Sequence record: ON529857.1 | Length of the DNA stretch: 64,000 nt | Reading direction: 5' to 3' (one strand) | Notes under the pieces: generated by a model | Told to the model about the DNA's origin: nothing | Databases searched by the model: none | The model's input: only the letters and a program-made list of their open reading frames with translations | Translations under genes and position numbers: made by a program | In this document: one piece after another, positions 30,496 to 38,393 of the stretch | How positions within the stretch are numbered: position 1 is the stretch's first letter | How the letters are laid out: each line of letters starts with the position of its first letter

Positions 30496-30722
30496 CGTGA
30501 AGAGAGTGGGGAACTTTCTGTTCCAAGGCCCGGCAAGCCGGGGTTCCCCATACCCGTGGTCGCCCTTAGGCGGCCAGGAGGACTCGTTCGCCAGCGGCGA
30601 AGTTGTCGTTGGAAGCTTCGACAGTTGTCAAAGTTGGATCGTGAGCAGCCGTAACCGCCATGCAGACCCTAGCACCCGTCATTCAATCCCGTCACCAACG
30701 TCAATCGATACTATTCGGCCCC
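30496..30722 (-). ncRNA. ssrA: two-piece tmRNA, coding piece; tag (A)SNDNFAAGERVLLAA*
   Basis: 5' GGGGCCG pairs with CGGCTCC of the acceptor piece with a G3:U70 pair; tag frame at 30613-30566; 3' end approximate. Confidence 0.85.
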
Positions 30723-30848
30723 CTAACAGGATGTCCACCCTAGCTTTCGGCGCACACAGGAAACCTGCATGCTTCGCCGGGAACTAGCCTCATTCCCTGA
30801 CGCCGGCATGGGGTAGGCCATGTCTGACGCGCCGGATGGGCACCCTGT

Positions 30849-30930
30849 TGGTGGAGCCGACGGGATTCGCACCCGTGTCTTGTCCGTCTGTTTCGTTCTC
30901 TCTGCTTTGGACCGGAGTCCGCTGCGCGAC
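30849..30930 (-). ncRNA. ssrA: two-piece tmRNA, acceptor piece
   Basis: ACGGG-TGCGAAT-CCCGT-CGGCTCC-A-CCA lies upstream of the coding piece (permuted order); 5' end approximate. Confidence 0.85.
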
Positions 30931-32840: not shown

Positions 32841-32873
32841 CCATTTACGTCGGTATTCGACAGGCTGTCAAAC

Positions 32874-32907
32874 AAAAAGCCCCACGTCCTGCGACGCGGG
32901 GCTCTTT
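32874..32907 (-). terminator. terminator after the Ro60 gene
   Basis: AGCCCCGCGTC-GCAG-GACGTGGGGCT-TTTTG on the minus strand. Confidence 0.8.
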
Positions 32908-32925: not shown

Positions 32926-34296
32926 TCAGTCGGCGGTGACGCCGTCCAGCTGGATCGCCTCGCTCTCGGCGATGTAGCGCAGCACGTTCTCGGAGAACCC
33001 GTCGATGTGGGTCCAGCCGTTGCCGTAGCCGACGCCGTTCTTGGCCGAGGCGACGTTGATCATGTAGGCGCGCGACGCCTTGGGCGCCGGCATGCCGCGA
33101 TTTTCAGCCTGCGCCTGTTCGTCGGTGATGACGATCAGGCGATCCGCCTGGACGTTCTCGTTGATCGCCCGGATCGCCGAAGCCAGGGCCGTGCCATGCC
33201 ACGGCTGCGACTTGCGGATCGCATCCACTCCCGCCATGCCCTTGCGGGCCGGCGTTTCGACCAGGGCGTTGGAGAAGGTGAAGACGCGCACGTCATCACC
33301 CGGTACGATCGACGCCAGGGTGGCGCCGGCGTCCATCCGGGTCAGATCGGATTTGGCGGACAGACGGGCGTTCATCGAACCCGAGACGTCCACCAGCACC
33401 ACGGTCGACCCCTTCAGCGGCTGCGCCGCCTTGATCGATTCCACCAGGGCCTGGTCCAGAGCCGGCTCGAAGGACGGCGCATAGCGAGCCGCCGCCGTGT
33501 AGCGGAACGGCAGCACACGGTCGGCGCCCTTGCGCGCCCGGATCGCGGCGTTGACCAAGGTGCGGTCGACGCCCGCCTGCTCCATGTTACGCAGGTTGCG
33601 CAGCAGGGCCAGGTAGCCGAGCTTATTCTCGCGCAGGAGCCGCTCGAAGGTTTCCTTCTTGTCGGCGCCGCCCGACAGGGCGACCTCCCAGGTGTCCGGC
33701 GCTTCCAGAGCGTTCTCGACCAGGCGGCCGAGCAGCTCGCCCTGTTCTGCCGACTTCGGCTTGACGTGCGCCAGGAAGAGCACGTCGCGCAGTCGCACAT
33801 CCTTGGCGCGGTCGTATTTGGCGATCTGATAGGGGTCGAACTTCACGAAGGCAGCGGCCAGGCCCTTCTTGACCTGCGCCGACAGGGGCGCCTTGCGACG
33901 CGCATCGCGCGGCGGATTCATCGCCCAGTAGAGCGCCAGGAACTCCGACAGTTCATCCGCACGCTGGATGACGCGCTCGATGGTGCTCGACACCAGGGCC
34001 GAACCCGAGCCGCGCTTCGCCAGCACGACCAGAAGCAGCAGCGGCGCATGGCGCAGCTTGGCGACTTCACGCGCTTCGATCGCCAGGGCCGCCAGCGAAT
34101 CCACCGGCACTTCCTGGGCCAGGGCCTGAATGCGGTCGGCGATGGTGACGCCGTCTTCGTAGAATTCGCCCTCCCAGAGCATGCAGGAAAGCACCGACCG
34201 GCGCAGCGCCTGGATCGGCGTCATGCGCGCCGCGACGGCGCCCTCATGGGTGCGTTCGTTGAACGTCTTGCGGGTATTGGCGTTGATCGCGCCCAT
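32926..34296 (-). CDS. rsr: Ro60/Rsr TROVE-domain RNA-binding protein with a C-terminal vWA domain
   Basis: THEGA, EAREVAKLRHAPL, KYDR...LRDVLFLAHVKP, PDTWEVALS, LGYLALLRNLRNM, RVLPFRY, vWA LVDVSGSM and IVITDEQ. Confidence 0.93.
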   Translation of the reverse strand: MGAINANTRKTFNERTHEGAVAARMTPIQALRRSVLSCMLWEGEFYEDGVTIADRIQALAQEVPVDSLAALAIEAREVAKLRHAPLLLLVVLAKRGSGSALVSSTIERVIQRADELSEFLALYWAMNPPRDARRKAPLSAQVKKGLAAAFVKFDPYQIAKYDRAKDVRLRDVLFLAHVKPKSAEQGELLGRLVENALEAPDTWEVALSGGADKKETFERLLRENKLGYLALLRNLRNMEQAGVDRTLVNAAIRARKGADRVLPFRYTAAARYAPSFEPALDQALVESIKAAQPLKGSTVVLVDVSGSMNARLSAKSDLTRMDAGATLASIVPGDDVRVFTFSNALVETPARKGMAGVDAIRKSQPWHGTALASAIRAINENVQADRLIVITDEQAQAENRGMPAPKASRAYMINVASAKNGVGYGNGWTHIDGFSENVLRYIAESEAIQLDGVTAD

Positions 34297-34341
34297 GGGT
34301 GCCTCCTTCAGGACTGGTCAAATAGGGCGCGCCGGACCAGT

Positions 34342-34493
34342 CGAGGCGGGGTTGGGGAGGATCAATCGGCGACGCCTCATGGCGCTCTATCCAACTGAGC
34401 TACCGCCGGAAAACCGGCGAGCGGAACTCGAATCCGCGACCTCCCGATTAGCAGTCGAAGAATGCGTCTCCTGCGCCATCCCCAACCCCCTCG
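34342..34493 (-). ncRNA. Y-RNA-like unit with a YrlA-type tRNA-like domain (closest to Ro60)
   Basis: Closing stem GGGGTTGGGGA/TCCCCAACCCC; TGGCGCAG motif; T arm GCGGA-TTCGAGT-TCCGC; TCGCCGG-TTTT-CCGGCGG; D arm TAGCTCAGTTGGATAGAGC. Confidence 0.8.
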
Positions 34494-34500
34494 GTCTGAT

Positions 34501-34634
34501 CCGGCGCGCTGGTAGGCAGGCGGGGGATTAAGCGAAGACGGGCGGGTTCGAACCGCAGGACCGGCACCAAGAGCCGGGCTTCAACCAAGAAGTATCCGTC
34601 GTCTACGCCACCCGCCCGCCAACCAGCGCGCCGG
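34501..34634 (-). ncRNA. Y-RNA-like unit with a T-arm-like hairpin only
   Basis: Closing stem CCGGCGCGCTGGT/ACCAGCGCGCCGG; GTGGCGTAG-ACGACGG-ATACTTC motif; CCGTC partner; 3' TTAATCCCC. Confidence 0.7.
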
Positions 34635-34638
34635 AGAC

Positions 34639-34790
34639 CAACAGGGCGACGGGGGATCAATCGACCCCACCGACGTTTGACCGTGCTACCCCTACACTAA
34701 AAGCGCGCAGTGCGCTTCCCAGGAGTTGAACCTGGCCTTGCCGCTCCCATAGCGATGAAAGTGACGTCTACGCCACCCGTCGCCCTGTTG
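34639..34790 (-). ncRNA. Y-RNA-like unit with a YrlA-type tRNA-like domain
   Basis: Closing stem CAACAGGGCGACGGG/CCCGTCGCCCTGTTG; GTGGCGTAG; CCAGG-TTCAACT-CCTGG; GAAGCGC-ACTGC-GCGCTTT; D arm TAGTGTAGGGGTAGCAC; 3' TTGATCCCC. Confidence 0.8.
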
Positions 34791-34798
34791 TTCAACCG

Positions 34799-34968
34799 AA
34801 AGACGTAAGGTAGGCCGTCAGGGGTTTGAGCGACAAGGCATTGCGTTGTCTAATGCTCTACCAGCTGAGCTACCGCCGGCCGAAACCAACGAGCGGGAGT
34901 TGAACCCGCGACCACCAGATGAGAAGTAGTCCTTGCCTACGCCACCTGACGGCCTGCCTTACGTCTTT
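34799..34968 (-). ncRNA. Y-RNA-like unit with a YrlA-type tRNA-like domain
   Basis: Closing stem AAAGACGTAAGGCAGGCCGTCAGG/CCTGACGGCCTACCTTACGTCTTT; GTGGCGTAG..TACTTC; GCGGG-TTCAACT-CCCGC; D arm TAGCTCAGCTGGTAGAGC. Confidence 0.8.
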
Positions 34969-35091
34969 CCGTCGATCCCTGGCGGGATCATCCCGAAGTC
35001 CTATATGCCGCCGAGGTTCAGTCGATTCCGGAGTTGAGTGCCCTAGAGGTGGACATTTTACCGAAGTAGCCGAAACCTACGCCATCGACGG
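34969..35091 (-). ncRNA. Y-RNA-like unit without a tRNA-like domain
   Basis: Closing stem CCGTCGAT/ATCGACGG; ATGGCGTAG-GTTTCGG-CTACTTC motif. Confidence 0.6.
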
Positions 35092-35101
35092 CGAATAGGG
35101 C

Positions 35102-35185
35102 GTCCGGGATTAGGCGGAACCGAGAGCGGGGGCTAGGCCCCCAGACGTACCAAAAACGAAGAACTCGGTCCCTGTCGCCACGGAC
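35102..35185 (-). ncRNA. short Y-RNA-like unit (first transcribed)
   Basis: GTCCG/CGGAC ends; GTGGCGACAG; GGACCGAG/CTCGGTTCC stem; TTCTTC; 3' CTAATCC. Confidence 0.65.
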
Positions 35186-35191
35186 AATGCG

Positions 35192-35220
35192 CTTATGCCC
35201 GAGGCGGACTCTGCTGTCAA
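35192..35220 (-). promoter_or_regulatory. promoter of the Y-RNA array and rsr operon
   Basis: TTGACA-17-CATAAG ending 6 nt before the first unit. Confidence 0.75.
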
Positions 35221-35255: not shown

Positions 35256-35283
35256 AAAAAAGCCCCCGGCGAACCGGGGGCTT
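35256..35283 (-). terminator. terminator after the regulator gene
   Basis: AAGCCCCCGG-TTCG-CCGGGGGCT-TTTTT on the minus strand. Confidence 0.85.
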
Positions 35284-36429: not shown

Positions 36430-37065
36430 TCATCCGACGCCGGTGGAGCCGAATCCGCCGACCCCGCGCTGGGTGGCGCTCAGCGTCTTAACGGACACCC
36501 AGCGCCCCTGAACCACAGGCGAAACGACCGCCTGGGCGATGCGATCGCCGCGCTCGACCAGGAAAGGCTCGGCGCCGGCATTGTGCAAGATCACCTTGAT
36601 TTCGCCGCGATAATCCGCGTCGATCGTCCCAGGGGCGTTCATCACGAAGACACTCCGCTTCGCCGCCAGTCCCGAACGCGAGCGCACCTGAAGTTCGTAG
36701 CCCGCTGGGACAGCGACGTTGAATCCGGTCGGCACCAGGGCGGCGCGCCCCGGTTCGATCAGGATCGTCGTATCAAGCGCCGCGCGCAGGTCCATGCCGG
36801 CGGCCTGCTCGGACTCGTAGGCCGGCATAGGCAGGCCTTCGCCGTGCGGCAAGGTGACGTATTCGATCGGCACGGCGTTCTCGATGCCGTGGAGAAACTG
36901 ACGGGCTTCCGAAAACGACAGCCTGACACCGGACGGCATGTCCACGCCTTCGAAGGTATTGAAAGCGACCTGGACATTCTCGAAACCGGCCGCCGAGAAC
37001 AGCCGACGCAATGCGTCGGCCGCCTCATGCTGGGTGGCGCGGGAGTAGTGGATGAGGACCGACAT
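36430..37065 (-). CDS. dut: dUTPase with an N-terminal extension
   Basis: AAGMDL, QVRSRSGLA, NAPGTIDADYRGE, RIAQAV, RGVGGFGSTG. Confidence 0.95.
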   Translation of the reverse strand: MSVLIHYSRATQHEAADALRRLFSAAGFENVQVAFNTFEGVDMPSGVRLSFSEARQFLHGIENAVPIEYVTLPHGEGLPMPAYESEQAAGMDLRAALDTTILIEPGRAALVPTGFNVAVPAGYELQVRSRSGLAAKRSVFVMNAPGTIDADYRGEIKVILHNAGAEPFLVERGDRIAQAVVSPVVQGRWVSVKTLSATQRGVGGFGSTGVG

Positions 37066-38393
37066 CAGACCTTTTCCTGCTCCAGGACGTCGCGCAGATC
37101 ACTGGCGCCGCCGATGAAGGTCGCCTCACGGAAGAACGAGTCTTCACCGGGATAGACGTCGTCGGAGACGGCCGAGTCCTCGAACACCAGGGGGAAGGTG
37201 CGCCAGCCCGGCTTGGCGGCTTCCTTCAGGCGCTTACGCTCCTCAGCGTCTTCGACCAGGAGGAACTCCACCTTGTGATCGGAGCCCAGCAACATCGCCT
37301 TGGCCTCTTCGCAGTAGGGGCAGTTCGGCATGGTGAAGACGACGAACGACTTGACCGGCTTCGCCAGCTCCTTGACGATCTTGCCGGCGCCGCCCTCGAC
37401 CAGAAGCGGGCCGCGCTTCAGGAAGGCGAAGGCGTTGTCCCAACCTTGGGTCTCGCCCTTGCCGTAGTCGGTCGAACGCTGCTCGAAGAAGTTGGTGTGG
37501 GTCGGCGCGTTCATGATCCAGTCGAGCCAGTCGAACGGATTGTCCCGCACGCCGTAGTTCGGCTTCAGGCCCAACTGAAGCAGACGGCGGTCGGCGATGT
37601 AACGGATGTATTGTTTGGCCGATTCCGGCGTCACGCCTTCGACCGGGCCAAGGGAGAAGGCCTGGTCGATGAAGGCGTCTTCCAGGTCCACCATCGAGCG
37701 GCAGGCGTCATAGATGCGGCGCTTGGTCTCGTCGTTCCAGATGCGCGGATGCTCCTTGATCAGCTCATGGAACAGCTTGATCATGGATTCGACGTGGTGC
37801 GACTCGTCACGGATCGACCATTCGATGATGGTGGTCATGCCCTTCATCAGGCGCCGGCGCTGGAAGCTCATCAGCAGGGCGAAAGACGAGAACAACTGCA
37901 TGCCTTCGCCGAAGGCCGAGAAGACCGCGATGTCGACCGCCAGATCAGCGATACCCTTGCCGCTCTCGCGCTCGAACATGTATTCGTGCTTTTCGCGCAT
38001 GGCGGCGTAGGACTGGAACGCCTTGAACTCGATCTCGGGCAGGCCCAGGGTGTCGATCAAGGTGGCGTAGGCGTCGATGTGGTTGGCCTCGGCCGCGATG
38101 AAGCTGCCGATCATCATCCGCAGCTCAGGATGCTGGAACCGAAGCGCGTATTTCTCGAAGTAACCGCGCGCCACGTCGACGTCGGCTTGAGTGAAGAATC
38201 TGAAGAGCTGAGTAAGCAGAGACTTCTCATTCTCCGTCAACTTAGTCTTCCAATCCTTGATGTCTTCAGCCATCGGCGCTTCATGCGGCAGCCAATGCAG
38301 GGATTGCATGACCTTATAGGCCTGATAGGCCCACGGATACACGAACGGCTTGTAGTAATCGCGAGGTTCGAGCAGGGAAGGAGTGGCGGACAT
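37065..38393 (-). CDS. nrdB: class I ribonucleotide reductase beta subunit fused to a C-terminal glutaredoxin
   Basis: FFTQADVDV, EANHIDAY, FGEGMQLFSSF, RDESHH, NFFEQR; C-terminal FTMPNCPYCEEAK...WRTFPLVF. Confidence 0.93.
   Translation of the reverse strand: MSATPSLLEPRDYYKPFVYPWAYQAYKVMQSLHWLPHEAPMAEDIKDWKTKLTENEKSLLTQLFRFFTQADVDVARGYFEKYALRFQHPELRMMIGSFIAAEANHIDAYATLIDTLGLPEIEFKAFQSYAAMREKHEYMFERESGKGIADLAVDIAVFSAFGEGMQLFSSFALLMSFQRRRLMKGMTTIIEWSIRDESHHVESMIKLFHELIKEHPRIWNDETKRRIYDACRSMVDLEDAFIDQAFSLGPVEGVTPESAKQYIRYIADRRLLQLGLKPNYGVRDNPFDWLDWIMNAPTHTNFFEQRSTDYGKGETQGWDNAFAFLKRGPLLVEGGAGKIVKELAKPVKSFVVFTMPNCPYCEEAKAMLLGSDHKVEFLLVEDAEERKRLKEAAKPGWRTFPLVFEDSAVSDDVYPGEDSFFREATFIGGASDLRDVLEQEKV

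What the first reader, a model, noticed from the sequence alone, without database searches (positions are those of the whole stretch)
32926..35220. Phage Ro60 (TROVE) gene preceded by a six-unit modular Y-RNA array
Seen in sequence: one promoter (TTGACA-17-CATAAG) drives six tandem non-coding units and then rsr. Each unit has its own unique closing stem and a shared module: 5' RTGGCGYAG, a short stem whose sequence differs between units but still pairs (GACGC/GCGTC, GACGG/CCGTC, CAAGG/CCTTG, GGACCGAG/CTCGGTTCC), TWCTTC, and a 3' element YT(G/A)ATCC or similar. The cargo varies: three units have a full permuted tRNA-like domain (T arm, acceptor stem closed by a short loop, D arm), one has only a T-arm-like hairpin, and two have none. 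Established: bacterial Rsr binds Y RNAs, YrlA RNAs mimic tRNA, and typically one or two lie beside rsr. Inference: this is a cassette of interchangeable Ro60 adaptor RNAs, possibly tRNA decoys against host anticodon nucleases or tethers that recruit different RNases or repair enzymes. I do not know of a described six-member array with variable cargo.
Basis: partly seen in the sequence, partly recalled or inferred. Interest (0 to 1): 0.9.

Follow-up and report, generated by a model that had tools for sequence, protein, structure and literature searches.

The report
Six-unit Y RNA array before phage Ro60
A jumbo Brevundimonas phage carries six small non-coding Y RNA genes in a row ahead of its Ro60 RNA-binding protein gene; the Ro60/Y RNA pairing is known, but such multi-unit arrays, found here in about 145 further phage and bacterial loci, were not described in any paper I could read.

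Summary
The window is Brevundimonas phage vB_BpoS-Kikimora. On the minus strand, a conserved TTGACA box is followed by six tandem structured units (35185-34348). Then comes a TROVE+vWA (Ro60/Rsr) gene (34296-32926) and a terminator.

All six units share one module: a closing helix, a bulged U, a GG:CC pair, an asymmetric internal loop (5' YGNA, 3' 7 nt), an 8-bp stem and UWCUUC. Units 3, 4 and 6 have a T arm, a closed acceptor stem and a D arm. Unit 5 has a T arm only. Units 1 and 2 have neither.

Covariation is strong: 94% of cells pair, against 62-64% after shuffling. A covariance model built only from other contigs finds exactly these six units in the 64 kb.

The 5' motif GGYGNA(N)G is a one-position variant of the published YrlA Ro60-binding motif. 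These are therefore Y RNAs (YrlA- and YrlB-like), not a new class.

Six units is not unique. CcrColossus and CcrPW have eight, Xanthomonas phage Sopo five, and 147 of 156 related loci have one to seven. The decoy idea is untested, and the anticodon loop such nucleases cut is absent. The best reading is a co-transcribed set of Ro60 adaptor RNAs. Novelty: a new variant of a known kind. Interest is moderate.

The parts
35260..35283 (-). Rho-independent terminator of the upstream HTH gene. It marks the start of the intergenic region.
   Evidence: 10-bp stem with 8 GC pairs, followed by a T-run. Conserved in relatives.
35192..35220 (-). Putative promoter: -35 TTGACA (35220-35215), a 17-nt spacer, and a weak -10 CATAAG (35197-35192). 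The predicted start falls at or near the first base of unit 1.
   Evidence: TTGACA is invariant and at a fixed distance from unit 1 in Kikimora, Gurke, Kabachok, Bambus, CcrColossus and CcrPW. The sigma-70 consensus scan did not call it. It is inferred, not shown.
35102..35185 (-). Y unit 1. It is minimal: a 5-bp closing stem, UGGCGACAG, a 9-bp stem 2, UUCUUC and two small hairpins. It has no tRNA-like arms.
   Evidence: R1 51.6 bits; R2 39.2 bits, E=5e-8. The MFE fold recovers the module. Orthologs: Kabachok u1 at 93% and CcrColossus u1 at 66%.
35007..35092 (-). Y unit 2. It is minimal: an 8-bp closing stem GCCGUCGA/UCGGCGGC, UGGCGUAG, an 8-bp stem 2, UACUUC and one hairpin with a 7-nt loop.
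   Evidence: R1 48.2 bits; R2 45.6 bits, E=1e-9; folds. It is the weakest unit: folding z-score -0.65, and no clear ortholog.
34965..35006 (-). 42-nt spacer between units 2 and 3, with a small GAUCCC/GGGAUC hairpin. It carries no Y module.
   Evidence: Read from the sequence and the global fold. No covariance-model hit.
34803..34964 (-). Y unit 3, YrlA-type. It has a 20-bp closing stem (24 bp allowing one mismatch), UGGCGUAG, stem 2, UACUUC, a T arm GCGGGUUCAACUCCCGC, a closed acceptor-like stem and a D arm GUAGCUCAGCUGGUAGAGC.
   Evidence: R1 81.7 bits and R2 76.0 bits. Rfam YrlA 31.3 bits, E=1.5e-4, below the gathering score of 69. Fold.
34642..34787 (-). Y unit 4, tRNA-like but with non-canonical arms. 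It has a 12-bp closing stem (17 bp allowing one mismatch), stem 2 with a conserved G-G mismatch, ACUUUCAUC in place of UACUUC, a T arm CCAGGUUCAACUCCUGG, a closed acceptor-like stem and a D arm with a 3-bp stem (GUG...CAC).
   Evidence: R1 74.8 bits and R2 57.3 bits. Ortholog Kabachok u3 at 80%. The unconstrained MFE prefers another fold.
34501..34634 (-). Y unit 5, T-arm-only (YrlB-like). It has a 24-bp closing stem, UGGCGUAG, stem 2, UACUUC, a hairpin with a 7-nt loop and a T arm GCGGUUCGAACCCGC. It has no acceptor stem or D arm.
   Evidence: R1 63.5 bits and R2 56.1 bits. Folds. Orthologs: Kabachok u4 and CcrColossus u5.
34348..34489 (-). Y unit 6, YrlA-type. It has an 11-bp closing stem, UGGCGCAG, stem 2, UUCUUC, a V hairpin CGACUGCUAAUCG, a T arm, a closed acceptor-like stem and a D arm GUAGCUCAGUUGGAUAGAGC. 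It contains the stretch annotated as 'tRNA-Ser' (34412-34486).
   Evidence: R1 93.2 bits and R2 86.1 bits. Rfam YrlA 38.8 bits, E=9.5e-7. Rfam tRNA only 20.8 bits, below the gathering score of 29. ARAGORN call.
34297..34347 (-). Leader of rsr: a hairpin GACUGGUC...GACCAGUC, then a Shine-Dalgarno GAAGGAGG (34309-34302). There is no terminator.
   Evidence: Read from the sequence. No terminator was called there.
32926..34296 (-). rsr: a Ro60 ortholog of 456 aa with a TROVE ring domain and a vWA domain carrying a MIDAS motif (DVSGS).
   Evidence: The MIDAS residues D303, S305 and S307 are invariant in the 5-phage alignment. GenBank names it 'RNA-binding protein'.
32870..32902 (-). Likely rho-independent terminator of the array-rsr transcript: GCCCCGCGUC-GCAG-GACGUGGGGC followed by UUUUUGUUU.
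   Evidence: Read directly from the sequence. The scan did not list it.

Best explanation
This is a phage-encoded Ro60/Y RNA operon. A single transcript probably starts about 30 nt downstream of a conserved TTGACA box. It carries six Y RNA paralogs and then the rsr (Ro60) mRNA.

Each unit folds so that its own 5' and 3' ends pair into a closing helix. Next comes the shared Ro60-docking module: a bulged U, a GG:CC pair, and an asymmetric internal loop with 5' YGNA(N)G. This motif is a one-position variant of the published YrlA motif GNCGAAN0-1G. Above the loop sits an 8-bp stem that corresponds to the anticodon-stem analog of YrlA. It is capped by a nearly invariant UACUUC.

The apical part differs between units:
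- Three units carry a permuted tRNA-like domain (YrlA type).
- One carries a T arm only (YrlB type).
- Two are minimal.

Inferred steps:
1. Host RNases release the units from the transcript.
2. Each unit binds the phage Ro60 on its outer surface.
3. The different apical modules gate the Ro60 cavity, or tether Ro60 to different host partners. Precedents are PNPase in Deinococcus, Salmonella and Thermus phage phiLo, and an unidentified partner that binds the tRNA elbow of YrlA.
4. The result is altered decay or quality control of structured RNA during infection.

Shown here: the anatomy, covariation, homology and distribution. Inferred: expression, processing, Ro60 binding and the partners.
For: **Protein.** It is a Ro60 ortholog.

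**Detection.** All six units are found by two covariance models, with no other hit in 64 kb.

**Covariation of both helices.**
- 32 distinct units: 94.1% of cells pair, against 64% when shuffled and 42-56% when slid. Cells changed on both sides number 148, against 45.
- 150 independent units: 94.5% against 62%, and 809 against 238.

**Conserved motif.** The 5' motif reads G129 G135 Y G150 N A145 G133 of 150. UACUUC reads U150 A144 C150 U141 U148 C147 of 150.

**Homology to YrlA.**
- Motif GNCGAAN0-1G (PMC4201824).
- Stem 2 corresponds to the AC stem, and the conserved UA to the UA at the variable loop (10.1101/312249).
- Rfam YrlA matches u6 at E=9.5e-7 and u3 at E=1.5e-4.

**Linkage to the gene.** All 225 hits in 80 IMG/VR loci are on the TROVE strand, as are all 251 hits in 76 genome loci. 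Nearly all are adjacent to the gene.

**Old paralogs.** Five of the six units are more similar to a unit in another phage than to any neighbour in their own array.

**Co-transcription.** No convincing terminator lies inside the array or before rsr. The single terminator-like call is the T arm of u3.

**Precedent.** The phiLo phage Ro60 binds two upstream Yrl RNAs and host PNPase in vitro (PMC12135203).
Against: - There are no expression, processing or binding data for this phage or any close relative.
- The Rfam YrlA scores are below the gathering threshold (38.8 and 31.3, against 69).
- Single-sequence folding z-scores are modest, from -0.65 to -2.6. For units 4 and 6 the unconstrained MFE disrupts stem 2 or a tRNA-like arm.
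- The promoter's -10 box is weak, and the consensus scan did not call it.
- Units 1 and 2 have no recognisable effector module, so 'adaptor' is a guess for them.
- The role of UACUUC is unknown.
- R2 is not fully independent. Its training sequences were collected with R1, which was built partly from the Kikimora units.
Confidence: 0.8

Rival explanations
1. Anti-defence decoys. The tRNA-like units would act as decoys or sponges for host tRNA-targeting defence nucleases, or for tRNA-sensing systems. Ro60 would only stabilise them.
For: - Three units mimic the tRNA elbow.
- Unit 6 carries a hairpin with an anticodon-loop-like 7-nt loop, CUGCUAA. It is conserved as CUGUUAA in CcrColossus u6, Sopo u5 and three IMG/VR units.
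- At least three different kinds of D and T arms occur across the related arrays.
- A Ro60-like protein of phage Bas63 was reported to counter the 'ppl' defence system (PMC11482910).
- The locus sits beside phage tRNA and tmRNA genes.
Against: - By homology to the YrlA structure, stem 2 replaces the anticodon stem, so the anticodon loop that such nucleases cut is absent (10.1101/312249).
- The acceptor stems are closed by loops, leaving no CCA end.
- Three of the six units, and about 110 of 261 units overall, have no tRNA-like arm yet keep the full Ro module.
- The same arrays sit next to close TROVE relatives on long bacterial contigs, including whole chromosomes. I did not check whether those loci lie in prophages.
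- No defence assay exists.
Confidence: 0.1
2. Cis-acting leader. The units would stay part of the rsr mRNA. They would serve as Ro60-binding sites that auto-regulate translation or stability of the message, rather than as free Y RNAs.
For: - No convincing terminator or obvious promoter lies between the array and rsr.
- The last unit ends 51 nt before the start codon.
- In most loci the array is immediately upstream of the gene.
Against: - In several loci the units lie downstream of the gene (L033, L049, L066, L081, L083, L086, L087) or about 1.3 kb away (the Acidobacteriaceae loci).
- In Salmonella and Deinococcus, Y RNAs co-transcribed with rsr accumulate as discrete Ro-bound RNAs (PMC4201824).
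- Six elaborate units with conserved tRNA-like cargo are more than a feedback site needs.
Confidence: 0.07
3. Decayed tRNA gene cluster with no function of its own. This would fit the GenBank 'tRNA-Ser' call.
For: - ARAGORN calls a tRNA-Ser inside unit 6.
- The T and D arms are tRNA-like.
- Phage tRNA genes lie nearby.
Against: - The Rfam tRNA score is 20.8, below the gathering score of 29.
- The arms are in permuted order: T, then acceptor, then D.
- The non-tRNA module is conserved, with compensatory changes, across more than 180 distinct units.
- The strand and position are strictly linked to TROVE genes.
Confidence: 0.02

Closest known systems
YrlA / YrlB Y RNAs of bacteria and mycobacteriophages (Chen et al. 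2014, PMC4201824; Rfam RF02553; structure 6CU1, 10.1101/312249)
   Same: - They are encoded next to a Ro60 ortholog on the same strand.
- A terminal helix carries a 5'-strand motif, GNCGAAN0-1G there and GGYGNA(N)G here.
- An internal loop leads to an anticodon-stem-like helix.
- The cargo is a permuted tRNA-like domain (T arm, closed acceptor stem, D arm) in YrlA and a T arm only in YrlB.
- The D and T arm sequences of units 3 and 6 are near the YrlA consensus.
   Different: - There are six units here, against one or two characterised per species.
- Two units have no tRNA-like arm at all.
- A UACUUC hexamer at a fixed 8-bp distance is nearly invariant in this subfamily. The Rfam YrlA consensus has only CUA there.
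- Position 5 of the motif is U, C or A rather than A.
- Scores are below the Rfam gathering threshold.
Thermus phage phiLo Ro60 with Yrl1 and Yrl2 (PMC12135203; PDB 9KOP, 9L5Y)
   Same: - It is a phage-encoded Ro60, and the best PDB relative of this protein (E=4e-21).
- Its Y-like RNAs are encoded directly upstream of the gene.
- In vitro they bind the phage Ro60 and host PNPase.
   Different: - Two RNAs were identified there, against six here.
- They were found through a CGAA motif and have no tRNA-like domain.
- The UACUUC module is not reported there.
Caulobacter phages CcrColossus and CcrPW: TROVE locus (gp139)
   Same: - The locus is syntenic: HTH gene, terminator, TTGACA, array, TROVE gene.
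- The same module is used.
- Units 1, 3, 4, 5 and 6 have counterparts in the same order. The link is weakest for unit 4, whose best match outside Kikimora is Kabachok u3.
- CcrColossus is cited as having Y RNA-like RNAs (PMC12135203, citing Chen et al. 2014).
   Different: - They have eight units, including two with class-II-like (Leu-type) D arms that Kikimora lacks.
- Kikimora unit 2 has no clear counterpart.
- The paper's supplementary table that lists what was reported for CcrColossus could not be read.
Deinococcus radiodurans rsr locus (Yrn1, Yrn2 and small RNAs a, b, d)
   Same: - Several small RNAs are encoded upstream of rsr and co-regulated with it.
- Yrn1 tethers Rsr to PNPase (the RYPER complex).
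   Different: - The Ro-binding helix is of a different, metazoan-like lineage.
- The arm order is different.
- There is no shared repeating module.

Membership tests
Ro60 / Rsr protein (TROVE + vWA) | TROVE (HEAT-repeat ring) domain | tested here: met
   Pfam PF05731, 48.3 bits against a cut-off of 23, although only a 50-residue stretch is matched. phmmer against the phage Ro60 structure 9KOP covers residues 13-396 at E=4e-21.
Ro60 / Rsr protein (TROVE + vWA) | C-terminal vWA domain with a MIDAS motif (DxSxS) | tested here: met
   VWA_2, 31 bits against a cut-off of 27. vWA_Ro60 scores 24.4, just under its cut-off of 27.7. D303, S305 and S307 are invariant in the alignment of five phage proteins.
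Bacterial/phage Y RNA (YrlA family) | Encoded within a few kb of a Ro60 ortholog, on the same strand | tested here: met
   All six units lie 51-890 nt upstream of rsr on the minus strand. All 476 hits in 156 related loci are on the gene strand.
Bacterial/phage Y RNA (YrlA family) | A helix formed by the 5' and 3' ends, carrying the 5'-strand motif GNCGAAN0-1G | tested here: inconclusive
   The helix is present and covaries. The motif reads GGCGUAG four times, GGCGCAG once and GGCGACAG once, so every unit differs from the published motif at one position. The subfamily consensus from 150 units is GGYGNAG. This looks like homology with a variant motif, but binding has not been tested.
Bacterial/phage Y RNA (YrlA family) | tRNA-like effector domain in the order T arm, closed acceptor stem, D arm | tested here: met
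   Met for units 3, 4 and 6 (Rfam alignments). Not met for unit 5 (T arm only, as in YrlB) or for units 1 and 2 (none).
Bacterial/phage Y RNA (YrlA family) | Score at or above the Rfam RF02553 gathering threshold (69 bits) | tested here: not met
   38.8 bits for unit 6 and 31.3 bits for unit 3; the other units give no hit. The YrlA-like region of mycobacteriophage Finnry also scores only 39.5 bits, and the units of CcrColossus and Sopo score 30-52 bits. The threshold therefore seems too strict for phage members.
Bacterial/phage Y RNA (YrlA family) | Accumulates as a discrete small RNA bound by Ro60 | not testable with these tools
   This needs RNA-seq or Northern blots and Ro60 immunoprecipitation from infected cells.
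tRNA gene (GenBank 'tRNA-Ser', 34412-34486) | Cloverleaf scoring above the Rfam tRNA threshold, with a free acceptor end | tested here: not met
   Rfam RF00005 gives 20.8 bits, below the threshold of 29. The stretch lies wholly inside unit 6, and its 'acceptor' strand is stem 2 of the Y module.

The most novel reading that the evidence does not exclude
The arrays would be evolving libraries of Ro60 adaptor RNAs. All units dock on one phage Ro60 through an extended common module: the bulged-U helix plus the invariant UACUUC, held eight base pairs apart. Each cargo class would direct the RNP to a different host tRNA-binding enzyme or RNA target, or would titrate a tRNA-sensing defence. The cargo classes are the canonical YrlA elbow, the variant elbow of unit 4, the Leu-type elbow, the T arm alone, the anticodon-loop-like V hairpin and the minimal hairpins. 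Units are gained and lost between lineages: 8 in CcrColossus, 6 in Kikimora and 5 in Kabachok.
Probability: 0.15. Interest if true: 0.8.

Novelty: new variant of a known kind. Interest (0 to 1): 0.5.

Why it matters
Y RNAs are thought to act as tethers that specialise Ro60. The partner of the tRNA-like YrlA module is still unknown, and only one or two Y RNAs per bacterium or phage have been studied.

This survey shows that a large clade of phage and bacterial Ro60 genes comes with tandem arrays of 2-8 Y RNAs. The units share one docking module and differ in cargo. That gives three things:

- **A natural set of matched RNAs.** They have the same Ro60 and the same module but different cargo. Pull-downs with them could find cargo-specific partners.
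- **Two new conserved features to mutate.** These are the bulged U with its 4x7 internal loop, and the invariant UACUUC.
- **A covariance model that finds the cargo-less units.** Earlier YrlA-based searches could not see them.

It also corrects annotation. The 'tRNA-Ser', 'tRNA-Gln', 'terminator' and small-ORF calls inside these arrays are parts of Y RNAs.

Tried and rejected
- **Rfam at gathering thresholds.** Nothing was found in the array. Only the E-value mode showed YrlA.
- **A loose regex-and-pairing scanner.** It gave about 30 false hits per strand in the 64 kb, so I dropped it for covariance models.
- **The sigma-70 consensus scan.** It found no promoter. The promoter claim rests on conservation of TTGACA alone.
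Rejected, because it does not leave CC in front of the closing strand. GCCGTCGA/TCGGCGGC does, and both models align to it.
- **UACUUC pairing with the 3' linker or with the GUA of GGCGUAG.** There is no complementarity in the first case. In the second there is no covariation, because N varies while UAC is invariant.
- **UACUUC pairing with the strand between the D arm and stem 2.** No consistent complement appears in units 6, CcrColossus u6 or Sopo u1 (sequences).
- **Single-sequence folding energy as evidence.** The z-scores are only -0.65 to -2.6.
- **First tRNA-arm regexes.** They were too strict and were rewritten.
- **Reading the supplement of Chen et al. 2014 and two Wolin reviews.** None is held. 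I therefore could not see how many YrlAs were listed for CcrColossus.
- **Neighbouring genes.** They gave no RNA-repair context: HTH regulator, dUTPase, RNR beta, MT-A70 methylase and one unknown protein.


Full report
**Origin of the window.** The window matches Brevundimonas phage vB_BpoS-Kikimora (ON529857.1) at 100%. This is a 312-kb member of the Dolichocephalovirinae isolated on B. pondensis LVF1. The finding spans the gene annotated 'RNA-binding protein' (KIKIMORA_03040) and the 1-kb intergenic stretch upstream of it. The record annotates only a 'tRNA-Ser' in that stretch.

**The protein.** ORF 32926-34296 (minus strand, 456 aa) matches Pfam TROVE at 48.3 bits (cut-off 23) and VWA_2 at 31 bits (cut-off 27). 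It matches PHROG 850 at 2e-62. Over residues 13-396 it matches the solved Ro60 of Thermus phage phiLo, 9KOP/9L5Y, at E=4e-21. The MIDAS residues DxSxS are invariant in an alignment with four other phage homologs. It is a Ro60/Rsr ortholog.

**The array.** I read the minus strand and searched for UGGYG followed downstream by CC and a complement of the flanking bases. This defines six units:

| Unit | Coordinates | Closing stem | Cargo |
|---|---|---|---|
| u1 | 35185-35102 | 5 bp | none |
| u2 | 35092-35007 | 8 bp | none |
| u3 | 34964-34803 | 20 bp (24 with one mismatch) | T arm, closed acceptor-like stem, D arm |
| u4 | 34787-34642 | 12 bp (17 with one mismatch) | T arm, closed acceptor-like stem, D arm |
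| u5 | 34634-34501 | 24 bp | T arm only |
| u6 | 34489-34348 | 11 bp | T arm, closed acceptor-like stem, D arm |

Each unit has the same parts, in this order:
- a closing helix of unit-specific sequence;
- a bulged U;
- a GG:CC pair;
- an internal loop, with 5' CGUA, CGCA or CGACA opposite a 7-nt 3' strand that begins with G;
- an 8-9-bp stem 2 whose sequence differs between units;
- the hexamer UWCUUC (ACUUUCAUC in u4).

Unit 2 closes with GCCGUCGA/UCGGCGGC. This leaves a 42-nt spacer before unit 3.

**Is it more than chance?**
- The composite pattern TGGCGNAG-N5-10-TWCTTC occurs four times in the 64 kb, all in the array. Chance expectation is 0.01.
- A covariance model built from 28 units of five phages (R1) hits the six units and nothing else at E<=1.
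- Those six units were training sequences. I therefore rebuilt a model from 150 units found on IMG/VR contigs only (R2). It finds the same six (86, 76, 57, 56, 46 and 39 bits; E 4e-20 to 5e-8) and nothing else.
- Folding energy alone is unimpressive, with z-scores from -0.65 to -2.6.
- Covariation is strong. On 32 distinct module sequences, 94.1% of cells pair. The figure is 64% after shuffling and 42-56% after sliding. Cells changed on both sides number 148 against 45, and 14 of 16 pairs show compensatory change.
- On the 150 independent units, 94.5% pair against 62%, cells changed on both sides number 809 against 238, and all 16 pairs show compensatory change. That alignment was fitted to the model, which favours the structure. 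The MAFFT-only alignment A3 gives the same answer.

**What it is.** Chen et al. 2014 (PMC4201824) defined bacterial YrlA RNAs by four features:
- adjacency to rsr;
- a terminal helix with the 5'-strand motif GNCGAAN0-1G;
- a tRNA-like domain in the order T arm, closed acceptor stem, D arm;
- companion RNAs (YrlB) that keep only a T arm.

The shared 5' element here (GGCGUAG, GGCGCAG, GGCGACAG) is that motif with one position changed. The subfamily consensus is GGYGNAG. The YrlA crystal structure paper (10.1101/312249) describes a short unpaired linker between the Ro60-binding helix and an 'anticodon stem'. It also describes a conserved UA at the start of the variable region. That matches the internal loop, stem 2 and the UA of UACUUC.

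Rfam's YrlA model aligns to unit 6 (38.8 bits, E=9.5e-7) and unit 3 (31.3 bits). Both are below the gathering score of 69. The YrlA-like region of a mycobacteriophage also reaches only 39.5 bits. The 'tRNA-Ser' of the GenBank record lies inside unit 6 and scores 20.8 bits on the tRNA model, below its threshold of 29.

The units are therefore Y RNAs. Three are YrlA-like, one is YrlB-like and two are minimal.

**Transcription unit.**
- A terminator closes the upstream HTH gene (35283-35260).
- A TTGACA box (35220-35215) is invariant and at a fixed distance from unit 1 in six phages.
- The -10 candidates are weak: CATAAG, CACACA and GACAAG. The consensus scan called no promoter.
- No convincing terminator lies inside the array or before rsr. 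The single call is the T arm of unit 3.
- A stem-loop with a U-run follows the rsr stop codon (32902-32870, read).

Co-transcription of the six units with rsr is thus likely but inferred.

**Relatives.**

| Phage | Units |
|---|---|
| Gurke (array 99% identical) | 6 |
| Kabachok, Papperlapapp, Domovoi | 5 |
| Bambus, Marchewka | 5 |
| CcrColossus, CcrPW | 8 |
| Xanthomonas phage Sopo (43 kb, unrelated) | 5 |

- Units 1 and 3-6 of Kikimora are each more similar to a unit in another phage (0.69-0.93) than to any neighbour in their own array (0.64-0.70). Unit 2 is the exception, at 0.56 against 0.59. The units are therefore old paralogs kept in order, with lineage-specific gain and loss.
- On 80 IMG/VR contigs that encode relatives of the protein, R1 finds 225 units, all on the gene strand. 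The count of loci by number of units is 0:2, 1:4, 2:29, 3:26, 4:12, 5:6 and 7:1.
- On 76 bacterial genome loci (Caulobacter, Asticcacaulis, Hyphomicrobiaceae, Acidobacteriaceae and others) it finds 251 units, again all on the gene strand. The count is 0:7, 1:6, 2:12, 3:11, 4:19, 5:14 and 6:7.
- These counts are lower bounds, because several arrays run off the 3-kb flank.
- Mixed cargo is the rule.
- Six units is therefore at the high end of a continuum. It is not unique.

**Conserved details worth noting.**
- In the 150 independent units, UACUUC reads U150 A144 C150 U141 U148 C147. It always sits directly after the 8-bp stem. It is more conserved than the Ro motif and is present whatever the cargo.
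- I found no conserved complement for it. Its fixed distance from the internal loop suggests that it is part of an extended docking site, or the site of a partner common to all units. This is unexplained.
- Closing stems have a median length of 8 bp across 476 units, and only 22 are 18 bp or longer. The 20-24-bp stems of units 3 and 5 are at that extreme and could be RNase III sites. That is speculation.

**How it most likely works.**
- In Deinococcus, the Y RNA tethers Rsr to PNPase. [quoted passage not shown] The YrlA elbow is thought to bind an unidentified tRNA-binding factor (10.1101/312249).
- For a phage Ro60, two upstream Yrl RNAs bind the protein and host PNPase in vitro (PMC12135203).
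- The best-supported reading is that Kikimora makes one Ro60 and six Y RNAs that all dock on it. The different apical modules then gate or redirect it, changing the decay or quality control of structured RNA during infection.
- The decoy idea is weaker. The anticodon loop is absent, the acceptor stems are closed, and half of the units have no tRNA-like part. The same arrays also occur next to TROVE relatives on long bacterial contigs, though I did not check whether those loci are prophages.
- A conserved anticodon-loop-like V hairpin, and a report that a Ro60-like protein of phage Bas63 counters a defence system (PMC11482910), keep the decoy idea alive at low probability.

**Novelty.**
- Ro60 with Y RNAs in phages is known, and CcrColossus is named in that context (PMC12135203, citing Chen et al. 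2014).
- I found no paper in the library that describes arrays of this size, the cargo-less units or the UACUUC element.
- The supplementary tables of Chen et al. 2014 and two reviews could not be read.
- I file it as a new variant of a known kind, of moderate interest.

Noticed in passing
window 34412-34486 (-); L004 2615-2689; L005 3898-3965 and 4023-4038: Several annotations fall inside Y RNA units and look like mis-calls of the tRNA-like cargo. They are the 'tRNA-Ser' of Kikimora and Gurke, the 'tRNA-Gln' of CcrColossus, and at least one of the CcrColossus 'predicted terminators'. The CcrPW ORF gp147 lies just beside its array, on the opposite strand. The Rfam tRNA score for the Kikimora call is 20.8, below the threshold of 29.
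   Followed up: partly
window 37065-38393 (-): KIKIMORA_03080 is annotated 'tape measure protein'. By Pfam it is a ribonucleotide reductase small subunit (242.9 bits) fused to a glutaredoxin domain. Relatives annotate it as RNR beta.
   Followed up: yes
window 30566-30911 (-): Rfam finds a permuted (two-piece) tmRNA at 57.7 bits, above the gathering score of 47. It lies between phage tRNA-Met and tRNA-Cys genes. It is not among the record's annotated features for this stretch, and ARAGORN did not call it.
   Followed up: no
window about 34456-34444 (-), in unit 6; also CcrColossus u6, Sopo u5, L021, L038, L041: A hairpin upstream of the T arm has a 7-nt loop, CUGCUAA or CUGUUAA. This has the form of an anticodon loop (Y-U-NNN-A-A; GCU or GUU). 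The flanking sequence UUCGACUGYUAAUCGRGAGGUC is conserved across unrelated phages.
   Followed up: partly
all units; alignment A4 columns 27-32: The hexamer UACUUC directly follows the 8-bp stem 2. It is nearly invariant in 150 independent units (U150 A144 C150 U141 U148 C147), whatever the cargo. No pairing partner was found.
   Followed up: partly
L008 2880-3180 (-), Mycobacterium phage Finnry: Downstream of its Ro gene are three tandem units with a different end module (GUGGAC...CAGCAA / GUCCAG). Only the middle one has a tRNA-like domain. They overlap the annotated 'gene 55 hypothetical protein'.
   Followed up: no
L114, L119, L121, L123-L130, L146 and other Acidobacteriaceae genome loci: The layout is conserved: four or five units in a fixed size order (about 69, 108-116, 90, 155-190 and 130-135 nt), then a gap of about 0.3-1.7 kb (about 1.3 kb in most), then one more unit just upstream of the TROVE gene. 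I did not examine what lies in the gap, or whether these loci are prophages.
   Followed up: no
window 35006-34965 (-): The 42-nt spacer between units 2 and 3 has a small GAUCCC/GGGAUC hairpin and no Y module. In the Kabachok and Bambus lineages, the position of unit 2 is taken by about 90 nt of unrelated structured sequence.
   Followed up: no
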